Assembly (NCBI GenBank): GCA_907165135.1
Contig: OU015569.1
Span: 744,001-808,000 of the forward strand
DNA length: 64,000 nt
Source of the DNA: Oikopleura dioica
Taxonomy: Eukaryota; Animalia; Chordata
Direction of reading: 5' to 3'
Below, one piece after another: positions 10,911 through 48,790 of the stretch. The position numbers and the translations under genes are program-made. Position 1 is the stretch's first letter. Every line of letters starts with the position of its first letter. The notes under the pieces were generated by a model, which did no database searches, was not told the DNA's origin, and was given only the letters and a program-made list of their open reading frames with translations.

Positions 10911-11137
10911 CTGTGCTCGGCAACCTGTGTAGAAAACCTGAGTCAGGCTCTGAAAGAGCTTGAATGAAAAGCCGCATAGCGGCTTCAACAGAATTTAAGA
11001 ATAAAATCTGAATGCTATGTTGCGGAGCCGCTTTGCGGCTTCGTTGATAGAAGAGCCGCTATGCGGCTTTTTATTGATGACCTTTTAGAGCCTGTCTCAG
11101 CCTGACTCAGGTTTTTTACACAGGTTGCCGAGCCCAG
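10911..11137. mobile_element. MITE family A copy
   Basis: ctgtgctcggcaacctgtgtagaaaacctgagtcagg ... cctgactcaggtttttacacaggttgccgagcccag. Confidence 0.9.
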
Positions 11138-11811
11138 CACTGGGGTTAGAGTTAGGTTTCTCGGACTAAAATTAAGCTTAGATTTTCAGTGAAATTTTGA
11201 TACTGTATTTATGGACAAGCCTTGACTGTAAATAGCTTGTGATAGAGTTCAGCCGCTGAACTTGAGCGTCGACTTGACTTTTTCTTCCCTTTAAATTTAA
11301 TGTTCATTGAATAGTTTAATCAGTTTCTAACAAAGAGAAACTCGAGCTAAAAGATAGAAGACTTCCAGATAAACATTTGTGGTCTCATTCAAAAGAAAAG
11401 TCTCATTCAAATGTTCCAAAAGCAACACCTCGTTCCTGAGATTCTTGGAGAAAAGCGTGGATGCCGGCAGAGAGTGAGTTTTTGAATTCATTTACTTCAT
11501 CTTAATATTCTAGTGAGAGTACTGTCTTTTTCTTCTAAGTAGTCTTTCAACCCTCTATTCGCGATTTTCACCGCCCGATTTCTACTCTATTTATCTTGAC
11601 TTACAGATATTCATTTGATTCTCTTCCGAGGCATATTTGCCATTCTGAGCAGATCATTTTTTATTTGAAGCTGGAGCATCTGCTCGAAACTCATCGAATA
11701 CAAAGCGAACATCCCGAGTTCACCTGAGTCACATGTAAAATAGAATAACGAAATTAATGTCTCCGAACTCGGTTCAATCTCATTTTTCCCATGAAAAAAT
11801 GACCTTCTTCT

Positions 11812-12535
11812 ACGGGTCGGCAACCTGTGTAGAAACCTGAGTCAGGGTCTGAAAAAGAGCTTTGGTGAAAAGCCGCGCAGCGGCTTTTTGAAAACGAATC
11901 AGTTAACCGGCTTCGCAAAATAACCTTTCAAATCTAGCTATAAATTTTGGCGAAGCAGCGTTTCAAAAGCCGCTACGCGGCTTTTCACCAAAAGTCTTAC
12001 AGACCCTGACTCAGGTATTCGGCTTTTGAAACAAAGCCGCAACGCGGCTTCGCCAAAATTTAAAACTACCGTGGTTTTCCATCTTAAGAGCGCCCAACTT
12101 AAGAGCGTTTTTGCCAATATTTTCCAAATTTTGTTATCTGAAAAAATCCCAACTTTAGAGCGTTTTTAGGAATTTTTAATTAATAATTAGAATAGCGTTT
12201 ATTTCAACCTGAAAAATCATTGAAAAAATTGTTTTCTACGCTTTTTCTCAGGTGAAATCATAGCCTCTGATTCAAAGATCGTAATTTTTTATCATAAATA
12301 GGTAAAAATGACCTCAGATGCATTTTTAGAGTTTTGGAAAAATTCTTTTATGCATTTTCATTCATCATTTTTTCCCACTGTCATCCTAGTTTGATCGTTA
12401 ATTTTCCAACTTAAGAGCGTTTTGGTCTACCCTTGTCATCTGAAAAACGCTCTTAAGATGGAAAACGACGGTAGATTTGAAAGGTAATTTTGCGAAGCCG
12501 CTAAGCGGCTTCGTTCTTTAAAAGCCGCTACGGGG
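11812..12535. mobile_element. Two adjacent family A copies, the second interrupted by a TA-flanked MITE
   Basis: First copy 11812-12018. The second copy's arms lie at 12020-12066 and 12474-12535. The central spacers of the two copies are reverse complements of each other. Confidence 0.8.
12069..12471. mobile_element. Tc1/mariner-superfamily (Tc2/pogo-like CCGT termini) MITE, 403 bp, TA target duplication
   Basis: TA|CCGTGGTTTTCCATCTTAAGAGCG ... CGCTCTTAAGATGGAAAACGACGG|TA, with repeated subterminal motif ccaactt(a/t)agagcgtttt. Confidence 0.85.
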
Positions 12536-12589
12536 CTTCTCGCAGAATCTCTTTCAGACTCAGGTTTTCAGACCGGAGCCAAGACCATC

Positions 12590-13610
12590 CTACAGTTTCC
12601 TCGCTCACTACTAATCCTCTACCAACTACACTCCACGACAAATACCTTACTACTCCTCAACACTGATCCTTCCAAAATGCAAAAGAAATGAAAACAAGAC
12701 TGATTTTTGATTGTCAAAATTGATTTTATTCAGGAAGATTATCAGAAGCATCCACACTTTGTGGTCCAAGTCCAGACTTTTCGCCGATTTCGCGTTCAGT
12801 TTTTCGCTGTTCGTCCTTTTTAGGAGAGCGACGAAAGAGTCACTTCCGCAGTCGAGTTTGTCGACTGCAGGTTGAATGCGACTCTGTTTCCAGATTCAAA
12901 TCAGTCTGGTCCAGCGTCTCATTTATGCCTAAGCTGGACCTTCAGATTTCTGAAGAAATTTTCAATAATCGCTTTTTTTCTCAAGAAATTTACCTTTTTA
13001 CGGGCGGCTTCGGACTGTCGAAGTTCGACGAACTGACTTTTTCAGCGTTTTTAGCCCTGACATCAACAGAAGTTCTAGAGATTCGCGAAACAAGCTCGCT
13101 GCCATGGCTAGGCCTCGGACGTAAAAAAGACGATTTTCACCATCCGGTCATCGTACGGGAACATGAGAGGGCTCATTCGAAAGGTCTTGATAAGGGCTTT
13201 CTATTTGACCGATAAAAACTGGGCCCTCCCTTTCTGTTACGAGTTATTTTGAAAAATATTTTTCGAAGCTTACCTTCAAAGTCAAATATCTCGAAAAAGG
13301 AGGACAGGGCCCAGTTTTTATAAGCCCAACAGAAAGCCCTGTTCAAGAGCTTTCGAATGAGCCTACTCTTGTTACCGTACGACGACCGGCTGGTGGTGAT
13401 GAATTTTTACGTCCGAGGCCTAGCCATGGCAACATGGGATTATCTAGAATTTCGAGCACTTGCAGGAAGAAAGCAAAGGATTGAAATTTCTACCTTGTTT
13501 TCTGTTAATTTAGCTCTAGAAAAGTGAAAAAACTCATCTTCAACAAAATTTTCTTATGAAAAAATATCAGCTTTATTATTTATTTTACACAGAATTTAGA
13601 TAAAAAGTCT
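12590..13610. repeat. Dispersed ~1 kb repeat, inverted copy of about 48100-48790 (this copy carries an extra MITE)
   Basis: Near-identical reverse-complement match, e.g. ccacactttgtggtccaagtccagacttttcgccgatttcgcg here versus cgcgaaatcggcgaaaagtctggacttggaccacaaagtgtgg at about 48600. Confidence 0.9.
13109..13422. mobile_element. hAT-like MITE, 314 bp, 19-bp perfect TIR, 8-bp TSD GCCATGGC
   Basis: GCCATGGC|TAGGCCTCGGACGTAAAAA ... TTTTTACGTCCGAGGCCTA|GCCATGGC. The paralogous empty site is at 48283-48290. Confidence 0.9.
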
Positions 13611-13679: not shown

Positions 13680-13797
13680 CTGAAAAGTCTTCAATGAAAA
13701 ACCGCGACTTCTTATTTTTAAAAAGCCACTACGCGGCTTTTCATTGAAGACTTTCCAGACCCTGACTCAGGTTTTCTTCACAGGTTGCCGAGCCCAG
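13680..13797. mobile_element. MITE family A, partial copy
   Basis: aaaagccactacgcggcttttcattgaagactttccagaccctgactcaggttttcttcacaggttgccgagcccag. Confidence 0.8.
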
Positions 13798-13839
13798 CCT
13801 TCAAGTTTCTCTTTGAGCACGGAAACTTGTTTAGAGTCC

Positions 13840-16730
13840 TCAAAAGGTCGACCTGTTGAAAAAGGATTTGCTTTTAAAAATTTTTCTCCAGAAGATGCTG
13901 CAGTAGAGTTGGTTTTTAACCCAGCTGACCGGAACTTTGCTATCTTTCTCAGATACGATATCGATTTGCTTTTCTTTCGGCACATCGAATTGTTTAGATT
14001 CTTTAGAATCTTCGAATGCTTGACTCGATGAGCAAGGACTTGAAGAGTTCACTTCGTACGGATCAAATTGTTTTCGAGGATTTTCGGTGGTTTTGAAAAA
14101 TTCGTCTTTAGTGGCTGTGTCGTTTTGGAAATATAGTTGTTTGGGTGTTAGAGATTTTGTATTGTTAACTAAATCCTCTGGAAGTCTCTCAGAATTTTTC
14201 TCGGATTCACTGACAGTTGATGAATGGACTTTAGTGAAAGCTCTTTCATGGTCTTGATCTCGTTTCATTGACTGTTGGCTTTTGAATTCTTCGAAGGTAG
14301 CGTCGGAATGGTTCTCGAGGTATTCGAAAGCATCTTGGATGTTCTCGCAGATATTTTCAGCGACGTATAAATTTTCATTCGTTGTCTGTGTCCGAGGATA
14401 CAGGACACAAAGAGATGCTCGTTTACCGATAAATGTAAAGTTGACAATGTACGCAGCTCTCAGGGGTGTATGGTGTCCACCAGCAAAGTAAACGTTTTGA
14501 ACATCGCCTAAATTTGATTGAATAAATTTTATGAATAATAACGACTTACACAAATTATGAGTACGACCGGTTCGCGCTTTGAAATTTGTTTCTTCGAAAA
14601 AATTAAAACTGAATGCAACCGAACGCGTGAAGCCTTGATTATTGGGACGAATAGTTGAACGAGAAGAGTTGCGCTCTTTGCGTGTTTCTCTTTTGCTGGG
14701 TATTCTTCGAAGATTCTTGATTCAAAAGTCATCAAATTAGTTTGTTCGTCTTCAAAGAATTGTTTCCAAATATAATCGTGGATTCCTTTTGCTTCTTGTA
14801 TCTTTTGTTTCTTTGTGATTAAGTAATTAATATCAAAGGAAAAGTTTCCCATCGTATTTTCATAAGATACATTGCCGTCAGAAAAGTTCCCGTGGAGATT
14901 TCGGAAGTCAAAGTCAACTTCGAAGTCGAGAAGAGGGAGTCTCGGACTGATGGAATTCTTATTCACAACTCGCATTTCGCACATCCCGAAAATCGAAGCA
15001 ACCATCGCTTTGCAGATAAATCTTTGTCTTTCTGTTGGATTCTTGTAATCATCGTGTAGCTTGATTGATGCGGTCAAGACTCCACAGGGATCGGTCATTT
15101 TATATACTTCTCCTCGCGAGACTGGAATGTTAAGACCACCATGAAAATGCTTGAGCTGTTGTTTTCTGTTATCGTGAGCTTCAATTTTGATATCTTGGGT
15201 CTCAAAGATTTTGCCTTTGTAAGTACTGCTAATTGTCATCCCCTGATGCCAATAAGCCCCGTCGTAGTGTTGAAGAAGATCTTAAACTGATGAATTTCTG
15301 AAGAGAAAATATACGTGTACCGTTGACAACAATCTGCATGGACTTATTGTCCGCCATCGAGCGTGGCAATTTGAAGCAAATCCATAATTTGTCTTGCTTT
15401 ATATTGGTTGTACGCGGTCACCTGTGCAGACCTGCACAGGAAGTCAAATTCACTTTCCTGTGCAGTTTCTGCACAGGAACTCAAAGCTCAGCTTCCTGGG
15501 CAGAGGTCTGCACAGGAAAGGTGTTTTTGAGTTCCTGGGAAGGGGCTAAATCAAAACGGGCCAAAGGAGCCATAGGGCCTGGGAGAACCCAGAACTGAAT
15601 TTGACTTCCTGTGCAGGTCTGCACAGGTGACCGCATACCACCTTTATATTTCTAAATCCTTCATTGTTGATAATGATCCAAAGACGGAACGGAACCGCCT
15701 TCAATGTAATTTCATCGTCTTGATTTGTGATCTGCTCTAAAAATGCTGGAATGTCGATGTTTTTGAGATATTCGATCTTTTTGTGCGACTCTCCCAAGGG
15801 TTGATTCGCATTCATGAAAACGCTGCTAGTCTTTCTTTCTTCCATACGAATCGTCTTCGATAAGTTCTCATGGTCACGCACAGTATATTCCCAAGCGTCG
15901 TTCATTTTCCCGATGTCCAAGCTCTTCTGTAGTTTACACTTGTATAAAACGATTGAGGTCGTCTTGCTATAAAATTCATAAAGCTGATCCTGAAAAAAGA
16001 AAGAAAACAATGAAAATAAATATTTTACTTTTTGTTGAACTCATGCTCGATCCAGTTGCACTCTTTCTCCCTCCTCCAGGCCATGCTTCTTATGATCTCT
16101 TTTTCTTCATAAAAATGCTTGAAAAAGGATAAATGCGCTTCGTCAGATACTAATATTTGACACTGATTCAATACAAACATTTGATTCCCTGCAGAAAGAC
16201 TTGCAATTTACGACTTTGCACTGACATTTTGAACTGCATTGAATAATGCCAATTTACGTCGCGAGTTTCTTCCTTGATTTCGGTTTCTTGTCCGTAAGAT
16301 GGAAACAAATGAGAGTATGGCAAATGGAGTTTATTCAAAATACGCGTTATACAAAATAAGTTGCTTGTGTAGCAAAATTGTGCCAGGCTGGTGTTCGCCA
16401 TTTTCCGAGTAAATATATGTTGTATGTACAAGTAAGTGAAAAGCAGAAAAAGAAAGTCGAACAGTGGCATTTGAAATGGCTGTATCTTCGCTGAGCTCCC
16501 GCTGTAGATCAGGCGCCCAGCGGCACAGCAAATGCGACCGGTGCGTCTTCTGTTGGTTATTATGGCTGGGGTGATGTCTGCACGCGTGTTCCAACGATCC
16601 GGCTTTTTCCGAAAAGTTGATTCACGGAGCGACTCAGTAGAAAAAAGAAGAAATAAAATAAAATTTAAACTGCACGAAGTAGTCTGTTGGGAATGCGACT
16701 TGATTGCACCATCACGGAAGGATCATCATA
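13840..16730 (-). CDS. Uncharacterised multi-exon protein (several hundred aa); ends approximate; hosts the introner
   Basis: Long open exons 15642-16000, 15321-15396, 14600-15280 and 13840-14550. Splicing gives the continuous frame ...NNEGFRNIK|QDKLWICFKLPRSMADNKSMQIVVN|DLLQHYDGAYWHQGMTISSTYKG. No family recognised. Confidence 0.7.
15406..15642. mobile_element. MITE with 47-bp TIR (GGT termini) and 8-9 bp target duplication forming an intron (introner-like)
   Basis: TIRs ggttgtacgcggtcacctgtgcagacctgcacaggaagtcaaattca / tgaatttgacttcctgtgcaggtctgcacaggtgaccgcataccacc (2 mismatches). Direct repeat (c)tttatatt at 15397-15405 and 15642-15650. Confidence 0.92.
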
Positions 16731-47867: not shown

Positions 47868-48790
47868 TAAATTTTGGTTCGATTCAATAACTACCCCTAC
47901 TAAGATAAGTTCGGCGGGAGATTTTCGGAACAGATGTTCTTCGCGGGATATCTATCCGGAAGCTTGTCTCGCGCCCTCTTTTGGACAAAAATCAGTTATA
48001 AAGAACCATTGGGTTGGCATTAATTATAAAAAAGTAATCATACAATGATCAATTTCAATTTTAAATGAATCTACAAGATTTCTTCCCGAGTAATAAAATA
48101 TTCTGATTTTATATTTAAATTCTGTTTAAAATAAATAATAATGAATCTGATATTTTATTAGAAAATATTGTTGAAGATGAGTTTTTCACTTTTCTAGAGC
48201 TAATTTGTCAGAAAACAAGGTGGTAATTGCAATCCCTTGCTCTCTTCCTGCAAGCGCTCGAAATTCTAGATAATCCCATGTTGCCATGCCAACGAGCCCT
48301 TTTCGCGAATCTCTAGAACTTCTGTTGACCTCAGGGCTAAAAAAACTGAAAAAGTCAGTTCGTCAAACTTCGACAGTCCGAAGCCACCCGTAAAAAGGTA
48401 AATTTCTTCAAAACAAAAAAGCGATTATTGAAAATTTCTTCAGAGATCTGAAGGTCCAGCTTAGGCAGAAATGAGACGCTGGACCAGACTGATTTGAATC
48501 TGGAAACAGAGTCGCATTCAACCTGCAGTCGACAAACTCGACTGCGGAAGTGACTCTTTCGTCGCTCTCCTAAAAAAGGACGAACAGCGAAAAACTGAAC
48601 GCGAAATCGGCGAAAAGTCTGGACTTGGACCACAAAGTGTGGATGCTCCTGATAAAGTTCCTGAATAAAATCAATTTTGACAATCAAAAATCAGTGTTGT
48701 TGTTGTCCTTTCTTTTGCATTTGGGAAAGGTTCAGTGTTGAGGAGTAGTAAGGTACTTGTCGTGGAGTGTAGTTGGTACAGTGACTACAG
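47868..48790. repeat. Local repeat copy 2 joined to the inverted copy of 12590-13610 (MITE-free, empty site at 48283-48290)
   Basis: Direct sequence comparison with 45741, 49020 and 12590-13610. Confidence 0.85.

What the first reader, a model, noticed from the sequence alone, without database searches (positions are those of the whole stretch)
15397..15650. Introner: a DNA transposon whose insertion makes a perfectly spliceable intron
Seen: a 237-bp element with 47-bp TIRs sits in a minus-strand coding region flanked by the duplicated target (c)tttatatt. On the coding strand the TIR end supplies the donor (AAT ATA AAG|GTGGTA) and the duplicated target supplies the acceptor (AATATAAAG|CAA GAC). 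Removing the 245-nt GT-AG intron (15397-15641) restores the pre-insertion sequence exactly, and the frame FRNIK|QDKLWICFKL stays open into the next in-phase exon. Established: non-autonomous DNA transposons can create introns this way (introners). Inference: a recent intron-gain event. GG termini with an 8-bp TSD suggest Merlin, while a 9-bp reading suggests Mutator.
Basis: partly seen in the sequence, partly recalled or inferred. Interest (0 to 1): 0.85.

Follow-up and report, generated by a model that had tools for sequence, protein, structure and literature searches.

The report
Exonic transposon, candidate new intron
A 237-base jumping-DNA element sits inside a coding exon of one Oikopleura dioica gene copy, placed so that it could be spliced out of the RNA without a scar as a newly born intron, but no RNA data could be brought to the junction, so the splicing is unproven.

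Summary
A 237-bp element (15406-15642, minus strand) has 50-bp terminal inverted repeats (47/50 identical), GG..CC termini and a perfect 8/9-bp target duplication. It interrupts exon 2 of Oikopleura dioica (Okinawa) gene OKI2018_I69.XSR.g13456.

The published gene model removes exactly 15397-15641 as a GT-AG intron (..FRNIK|QDKLW..). The paralogue g13447 (37 kb away), five environmental genomic relatives and two spliced transcript-like contigs are all uninterrupted at this site. The interruption is therefore a gain on the g13456 branch.

It is not very recent. An independent DNA sample, 2-6% diverged, also carries the filled site.

Splicing is not shown. Three bulk RNA runs gave no reads on the gene, and no transcript-derived protein of g13456 exists in the collections.

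Two new complications:
- 24 coding bases (NEGFRNIK) directly abutting the element are also unique to this gene, so "exact restoration" restores a derived state, not the ancestral one.
- The reference haplotype has a 1-nt homopolymer frameshift further downstream.

No second copy of the element was found, so "introner family" is untested. Its structure fits Merlin.

This scan has already noted many similar exonic MITEs elsewhere in this genome, none with RNA proof. Verdict: a plausible new member of a known kind, of moderate interest.

The parts
15406..15642 (-). 237-bp non-autonomous TIR element (8-bp TSD reading), GG..CC termini, with internal CCTGTGCAG/CTGCACAGG palindromic sub-repeats
15593..15642 (-). 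5' terminal inverted repeat on the coding strand (GGTGGTATGCGGTCACC...). Its bases 2-3 are the proposed GT donor.
   Evidence: 47/50 identical to the other arm
15406..15455 (-). 3' terminal inverted repeat on the coding strand
15643..15650 (-). Upstream copy of the target-site duplication AATATAAA (9-bp repeat AATATAAAG = 15642-15650)
   Evidence: family D7
15398..15405 (-). Downstream copy of the target-site duplication. Its last A plus the flanking G at 15397 make the proposed AG acceptor.
15397..15641 (-). Proposed 245-nt GT-AG intron, identical to the intron in the published model g13456
   Evidence: Splicing itself is not shown.
15642..15665 (-). 24 nt (codons NEGFRNIK) directly 5' of the element, absent from the paralogue and all relatives. 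Together with the intron it forms one contiguous 269-nt lineage-specific block.
16029..16084 (-). Exon 1 of g13456 (ATG at 16084)
15642..15966 (-). Exon 2 (upstream of the element)
15321..15396 (-). Exon 3 (QDKLWICFKLPRSMADNKSMQIVVN). It is followed by a conserved 40-nt GT-AAG intron at 15281-15320.
14550..15280 (-). Exon 4. The reference has A4 at 14691-14694 where sample X4 has A5. A5 keeps the family's reading frame.
   Evidence: (table 4)
13840..14507 (-). Last exon (after the 42-nt intron 14508-14549), missed by the published model. Collinear with the C-terminus of P0012/P0013.

Best explanation
A non-autonomous cut-and-paste DNA transposon, Merlin-like by structure, inserted into the coding sequence of g13456. 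This gene is one of two tandem-region paralogues of an Oikopleura-specific gene on the X-specific region of O. dioica (Okinawa lineage).

The element begins with G|GT, and the 8-bp target ended in A followed by G. The primary transcript therefore carries a GT donor one base inside the element and an AG acceptor one base past the second target copy. Removing those 245 nt gives back the pre-insertion reading frame.

I infer that the spliceosome does this, and that the element now acts as a lineage-specific intron whose two ends are brought together by a 50-bp RNA stem.

Shown: the transposon anatomy, the derived state, the frame arithmetic, and presence in two diverged haplotypes.

Inferred: that the element is actually spliced, and spliced at these sites.
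For: - TIR, TSD and uniqueness against shuffles.
- The host is a real annotated gene, P0011 = OKI2018_I69.XSR.g13456, and its published model uses exactly this intron. That annotation was AUGUSTUS with RNA-seq intron hints (PMC8008620).
- The site is uninterrupted in paralogue g13447 (L006), in genomic contigs L001-L005, and in the spliced transcript-like contigs P0012 and P0013.
- In the tree, g13456 is sister to (g13447, L002), so the gain lies on the g13456 branch.
- The gene is constrained on both sides of the element. dN/dS against g13447 is 0.11 upstream and 0.20 downstream.
- Independent DNA sample X4 has contigs bridging both element junctions (table 8).
- In X4 the downstream frame is intact, with A5 at 14691-14694 and the only other coding indels summing to -3 (table 4).
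- Of the 25 listed differences between the two element-bearing haplotypes in the last exon, 13 are synonymous. That gives pN/pS about 0.24, binomial P = 5e-4.
- AAG acceptors are used in this gene family. The conserved 40-nt intron ends TTTAAG in both paralogues.
- Precedents exist for MITE-derived introns in tunicates and elsewhere (PMC11282704; PMC12130899).
Against: - No RNA read or transcript-derived protein covers g13456. Three bulk oligo-dT RNA runs gave zero reads on the exons, and 13 runs guessed to be RNA hold none of the query's words.
- Protein searches found no ORF from a spliced or an unspliced transcript of g13456.
- The lineage of the RNA samples is unknown, so the RNA result is no test rather than a negative.
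- The donor AAG|GTGGTA matches the usual GTAAGT poorly. It falls at the 9th percentile of a crude, contaminated PWM built from this window. An in-frame alternative donor, GTG|GTATGC, lies 3 nt downstream.
- Both splice sites lie at the base of a -149 kcal/mol stem.
- The reference haplotype has a 1-nt frameshift in exon 4.
- The higher divergence of the outer exons (5-8%) compared with the element (2%) suggests recombination. The pN/pS signal may therefore predate the insertion.
Confidence: 0.5

Rival explanations
1. The element is simply a disruptive insertion in a redundant, decaying gene copy. It is not spliced, or the gene is not transcribed. Read-through stops 32 codons into the element, and the 'intron' exists only in an ab initio gene model that picked the one frame-preserving GT-AG pair.
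For: - There is no RNA support of any kind.
- The reference has a frameshift at 14691-14694.
- A 79%-identical paralogue lies 37 kb away.
- The donor looks weak and the splice sites sit in a very stable stem.
- The read-through ORF ends at 15546.
Against: - dN/dS is 0.11-0.20 on both sides of the element.
- The g13456 branch is no longer than the g13447 branch.
- The X4 haplotype carries the element yet keeps the whole downstream frame.
- There is an excess of synonymous differences between the two filled haplotypes.
- The frameshift sits in an A-run of a Nanopore-based assembly and may be an assembly error.
- The paralogue has a frameshift of its own, so it is not an obviously better copy.
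Confidence: 0.25
2. The element is removed from the RNA, but not at the proposed sites. One option is the GTATGC donor 3 nt downstream, which adds one Val. Another is an internal ..TTCCTGTGCAG acceptor, which shifts the frame. A third is non-canonical removal of the whole 269-nt lineage-specific block, which would give INKDK or INQDK, collinear with all relatives.
For: - The alternative donor scores higher in the crude PWM.
- The 24 nt adjoining the element are absent from every relative, so removing 24+245 nt reproduces the family's length exactly.
- About 11% of O. dioica introns are non-GT/AG (PMC8008620).
- An earlier scan note (s1-342390) says non-GT introns in this genome are closed by a terminal stem.
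Against: - Whole-block removal needs AA..AG, AT..GC, TG..CA or GA..AA ends. To my knowledge none of these is a common O. dioica class.
- The terminal stem closes at the element ends, not at the block ends.
- Internal acceptors break the frame.
Confidence: 0.15
3. This was not a transposition at this site. The element, its two target copies and about 15+3 nt of foreign flank were copied in one piece from another locus into a double-strand break (templated repair). The 24 nt are then the exonised part of that patch.
For: - The extra DNA is one contiguous 269-nt block.
- The left TSD copy lies inside sequence that no relative has.
- The block is bounded by a 1-2-nt microhomology (A/AA).
Against: - No donor locus is known.
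- A 24-nt in-frame insertion that later supplied an AT-rich target explains the same facts.
- The 22-mer flank occurs only once in the window.
Confidence: 0.1

Closest known systems
Introners of Micromonas / Aureococcus (Huff, Zilberman & Roy 2016; reviewed in PMC11282704)
   Same: A short non-autonomous DNA transposon with TIRs. One splice site is carried by the element and the other is recruited from the duplicated target, so that element plus one TSD copy is removed without a scar.
   Different: Those are families with hundreds to thousands of near-identical intronic copies and RNA proof, and they have 3-bp TSDs. Here there is one copy and no RNA, with an 8/9-bp TSD. The acceptor also needs a chance G after the target.
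MITE-derived non-canonical introns of the larvacean Fritillaria borealis (Henriet et al. 2019, as summarised in PMC11282704 and PMC13326754)
   Same: The host is also an appendicularian tunicate. The introns lie at species-specific positions and carry TIRs and TSDs.
   Different: The Fritillaria introns are mostly AG-AC or AG-AT and are processed by a modified spliceosome. This candidate is canonical GT-AG.
Introners validated in the ascidian Styela clava (PMC12130899)
   Same: A tunicate in which TE insertions were shown to create introns, using RNA-seq and orthologue comparison.
   Different: A different host and a different element. That case was validated with RNA and this one is not.
Merlin superfamily DNA transposons (Feschotte 2004; PMC8101967)
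   Same: Terminal 5'-GG, a TIR length within 24-462 bp, and an 8- or 9-bp TSD.
   Different: No transposase and no autonomous partner with matching TIRs has been linked to this element.
Other exonic MITEs noted by this scan in the same genome (s1-322911, s1-330330 and others)
   Same: Young TIR elements in O. dioica Okinawa coding exons that can be removed in frame. Published models call them introns, and none has RNA proof.
   Different: Those were described as hAT-type families. This element has GG termini and matched nothing in the scan's sequence index.

Membership tests
Introner (intron-generating transposon) | Transposon hallmarks (TIRs and TSD) at the intron boundaries | tested here: met
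   47/50 TIRs and a perfect 8/9-bp TSD
Introner (intron-generating transposon) | The insertion lies in coding sequence at a position that is intron-free in homologues | tested here: met
   The paralogue, five genomic relatives and two transcripts are uninterrupted there
Introner (intron-generating transposon) | Element end plus TSD provide splice sites that allow precise removal | tested here: met
   G|GT at the element start and A|G at the target end. Removing 245 nt keeps the frame and equals the published model.
Introner (intron-generating transposon) | The element is actually spliced out of the mRNA | tested here: inconclusive
   Three RNA runs gave no reads on the gene, and no transcript-derived proteins were found. 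The lineage of the RNA samples is unknown.
Introner (intron-generating transposon) | Many near-identical copies forming introns in unrelated genes | tested here: inconclusive
   No other copy was found in the 64-kb window, in about 28 kb of other O. dioica DNA or in JGI metagenomes. X4 word depth over the element is only about 2-2.5x the flanks. The whole genome could not be searched.
Merlin superfamily (non-autonomous member) | 8- or 9-bp TSD | tested here: met
   AATATAAA(G). The criterion is quoted from PMC8101967.
Merlin superfamily (non-autonomous member) | TIRs of 24-462 bp with a conserved terminal 5'-GG | tested here: met
   50-bp TIRs starting GGTGGTA / GGTTGTA
Merlin superfamily (non-autonomous member) | An autonomous relative with matching TIRs that encodes a DDE_Tnp_IS1595 transposase | not testable with these tools
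   No tool here allows a search of the O. dioica genome
hAT MITE | 8-bp TSD and short TIRs with the terminal motif YARNG (from my own knowledge) | tested here: not met
   The TSD length fits, but the termini are GGTGG / GGTTG and the TIRs are 50 bp
Mutator / MULE MITE | 9-11-bp TSD with long TIRs | tested here: inconclusive
   A 9-bp reading is possible but puts the two TIRs one base out of register

The most novel reading that the evidence does not exclude
This Merlin-like element, whose GGT termini offer a GT donor in either orientation, is one of several transposon families now creating spliceosomal introns in the Okinawa lineage of O. dioica. Here the birth of the intron came together with eight new codons from adjoining foreign DNA. 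If RNA confirms it, this would give a direct, datable mechanism for the unexplained massive intron turnover of this chordate.
Probability: 0.3. Interest if true: 0.7.

Novelty: new member of a known kind. Interest (0 to 1): 0.42.

Why it matters
O. dioica replaced most of its ancestral introns with new ones, and the source of the new introns has never been settled. A datable transposon insertion that is spliced as an intron in an otherwise constrained gene would be a concrete example of that source in a chordate. It would extend what is known from Fritillaria and Styela. On its own, without RNA and without evidence of a family, this single locus is a good candidate and not a demonstration. The same pattern has already been flagged many times in this genome by this scan.

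Tried and rejected
- RNA evidence. The single sequencing-run run (kind any) found five DNA holders and no RNA holder. The single read-laying run (three bulk RNA runs of 2026 plus DNA run X4, likeness at least 90) put no RNA read on any exon. The only RNA hits were partial, at 16226-16427, and they run on into unlike sequence. This is no test, because the lineage of the RNA is unknown.
- Empty allele. None was seen in X4.
- Other copies of the element. A 25-nt TIR pattern found 0 hits in JGI metagenomes. A looser palindrome pattern found 5 hits, all chance matches with no further similarity. The scan's own index had nothing by sequence.
- Orthologue of g13456 in another O. dioica lineage. Three protein searches and one full HMMER search found only g13447 and environmental relatives. 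L002 groups with g13447 and not with g13456.
- Splice-site PWM built de novo from ORF-joining GT..AG pairs in the window. The unseeded run converged on noise. The seeded run is circular and contaminated. I use its scores only as a rough ranking.
- Host protein family. There is no Pfam family. The only hit is a sub-threshold Condensation-domain match for P0012.
- Rfam and tRNA scans of the window found nothing.

Full report
**The sequence**

On the minus strand the coding frame ..GGA TTT AGA AAT ATA AAG runs into GTGGTATGCGGTCACC... It resumes after ...GGTGACCGCGTACAACC AATATAAAG with CAA GAC AAA.

- The repeat finder reports the 9-bp direct repeat at 15397-15405 and 15642-15650, and inverted arms at 15400-15455 and 15593-15648.
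- Trimmed to the element proper, the arms are 50 nt and 47/50 identical.
- The 33-nt TIR core occurs only at these two places in the window, with none expected by chance.
- With an 8-bp duplication (AATATAAA) both ends start GGT in register and the element is 237 bp (15406-15642). The 9-bp reading puts the ends one base out of register.
- The interval 15397-15641 is 245 nt and GT..AG, and its removal keeps the frame.

**The host**

Protein searches identify the gene as Oidioi.mRNA.OKI2018_I69.XSR.g13456 of Oikopleura dioica. The record is OU015569.1, X-specific region, and the protein is P0011. This agrees with the genome identity given in earlier scan notes.

It also removes a 40-nt intron after ..QIVVN. 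That annotation was AUGUSTUS with RNA-seq intron and exon hints (PMC8008620). Whether this particular intron had a hint cannot be known from here.

My reading of the gene is five exons: 16084-16029, 15966-15642, 15396-15321, 15280-14550 and 14507-13840. The published 3' end is wrong, for two reasons:
- The reference has A4 at 14691-14694, where DNA sample X4 has A5.
- A5 gives EYPAKRETRKE..NNQGFTRSVAFSFNF, as in the paralogue and in all relatives (table 4).

**Is the interruption derived?**

Yes. The following are all continuous across the site, reading ..RLWF(V/I)INKD(T/D)LWIC..:
- the paralogue g13447 (P0005, L006), 37 kb away and 81% identical in DNA;
- five environmental genomic contigs (L001-L005, 70-84% identical);
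- two uninterrupted transcript-like contigs (P0012, 467 aa on a 1580-nt contig; P0013).

P0013 is the spliced form of the gene seen unspliced in L004/L005. The family is therefore expressed and its conserved intron is spliced in a relative.

A maximum-likelihood tree places g13456 as sister to (g13447, L002) with 89/89 support. I therefore have no true orthologue of g13456 from another lineage. The gain can only be placed somewhere on the g13456 branch.

**How young is it?**

DNA sample X4 comes from another study and differs by 2-6% over the 3 kb laid. Its contigs bridge both element junctions (15144-15443 and 15605-15998), and no joint skips the element (tables 5 and 8). The element itself differs at 4 of 203 positions.

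The insertion is therefore older than the split of these two haplotypes. No empty allele was seen.

**Is it spliced?**

This is not shown.
- Three bulk oligo-dT RNA runs labelled with the same species put no read on any exon.
- Their only hits, at 16226-16427, are partial and run on into unlike sequence.
- Thirteen further runs guessed to be RNA hold none of the query's sampled words.
- No transcript-derived ORF of g13456, spliced or truncated, exists in the protein collections.

The lineage of the RNA samples is unknown, and O. dioica cryptic lineages are far apart. These are therefore blanks and not negatives.

**Indirect evidence for a working gene**

- dN/dS against g13447 is 0.11 for the exon upstream of the element and 0.20 for the exons downstream.
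- The g13456 branch is not longer than its sister's.
- X4 carries the element yet keeps the full downstream frame.
- Among the differences listed between the two element-bearing haplotypes in the last exon, 13 of 25 are synonymous. That gives pN/pS about 0.24, binomial P = 5e-4.

A caveat applies to the last point. Divergence is 2% at the element but 5-8% in the outer exons, so recombination may have brought in older variation.

**Splice-site quality**

- The donor AAG|GTGGTA is a poor match to GTAAGT.
- A second in-frame donor, GTG|GTATGC, lies 3 nt downstream and would add one Val.
- The AAG acceptor has a precedent in this very gene family, where the conserved 40-nt intron ends TTTAAG in both paralogues.
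- My home-made PWM is contaminated and circular. It supports only the ranking that the proposed acceptor is no worse than the internal ..CTGTGCAG sites.
- The transcript would fold into a -149 kcal/mol hairpin that juxtaposes the two splice sites. This is typical of MITE-derived introns, but it could also hide the donor.

The 24 nt immediately 5' of the element (15642-15665, NEGFRNIK) are absent from the paralogue and from every relative. The lineage-specific DNA is thus one contiguous block of 269 nt.

Taking all of it out, with the cut shifted by one or two bases, gives ATC AAC AAA GAC AAA (INKDK). That is collinear with INKD(T/D) in the whole family. The left target copy lies inside these 24 nt. 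There are two possibilities:
- A 24-nt in-frame insertion came first and offered the AT-rich target.
- The element with its flanks and both target copies arrived in one piece from another locus.

I could not discriminate between them. The 22-nt flank is unique in the window, and the genome cannot be searched with these tools.

**Classification**

GG termini, a 50-bp TIR and an 8/9-bp TSD are the structural hallmarks of Merlin as stated in PMC8101967. The usual hAT terminal motif is not present. No transposase link could be tested.

No other copy was found in the window, in about 28 kb of other O. dioica DNA or in JGI metagenomes. Word depth over the element in X4 is only about twice that of the flanks. 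The element may well be low-copy. "Introner" in the strict sense of a proliferating, intron-making family is untested.

The element supplies GT at either end, but the AG depends on a target ending in A followed by G. That is roughly one random site in sixteen. The fit may reflect survival of a spliceable insertion and not design.

**Context and verdict**

MITE-derived introns are established in the larvacean Fritillaria borealis, and introners have been validated in the ascidian Styela clava. I found no paper reporting them for O. dioica.

This scan has flagged many similar exonic MITEs in the same genome, all without RNA proof.

This locus is a sound, well-dated candidate of a known kind. I put the probability that it is spliced as proposed at about one half.

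Noticed in passing
window 14691-14694: The reference has AAAA (minus strand) where DNA sample X4 has AAAAA. Only A5 keeps the family's reading frame (EYPAKRETRKE..NNQGFTRSVAFSFNF). This is either a Nanopore homopolymer error or a real frameshift. It made the published g13456 model end in an out-of-frame tail and miss the last exon (13840-14507).
   Followed up: partly
L006 about 11130-11140 (OU015569.1, g13447): The paralogue has its own 1-nt frameshift (..GNVSYEKR* instead of ..GNVSYENTMGNFSFDI). This explains why it is annotated as two genes (288 aa and 197 aa).
   Followed up: partly
L013 (JGI Ga0115102_10549752) and L006: A 6.5-kb intron-free environmental contig carries the family gene, a Zn_ribbon_3CxxC gene, a PDZ gene and a fourth ORF on one strand with short gaps. 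The order is the same as around g13447. It looks like a spliced polycistronic (operon) transcript of a related Oikopleura.
   Followed up: no
window 13701-13801: Summed word depth in X4 is about 260,000 against about 65 in the flanks, with many back-joints and loose ends. This is a very high-copy short repeat (an abundant MITE family) just downstream of the gene.
   Followed up: no
window 16318-16408: RNA runs X9 and X10 have poly(A)-tailed reads ending at 16318/16319 (the end of a minus-strand transcript). They match only about 90 nt and then diverge. They probably come from the 3' UTR of the upstream zona-pellucida gene in a diverged lineage, or from a paralogue.
   Followed up: no
P0012 residues 15-182: The full-length relative of the host protein has a sub-threshold Pfam match to the Condensation domain (E = 3e-4, 20 bits against a cut-off of 30.6). 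Otherwise the family has no known domain and seems restricted to Oikopleura-like sequences.
   Followed up: no
window 12461-13108 and 48218-48778; L006 12660-13345: A repeat of about 600 bp, 89-94% identical, is shared between the region downstream of g13456, a second place in the window, and the region downstream of g13447.
   Followed up: no
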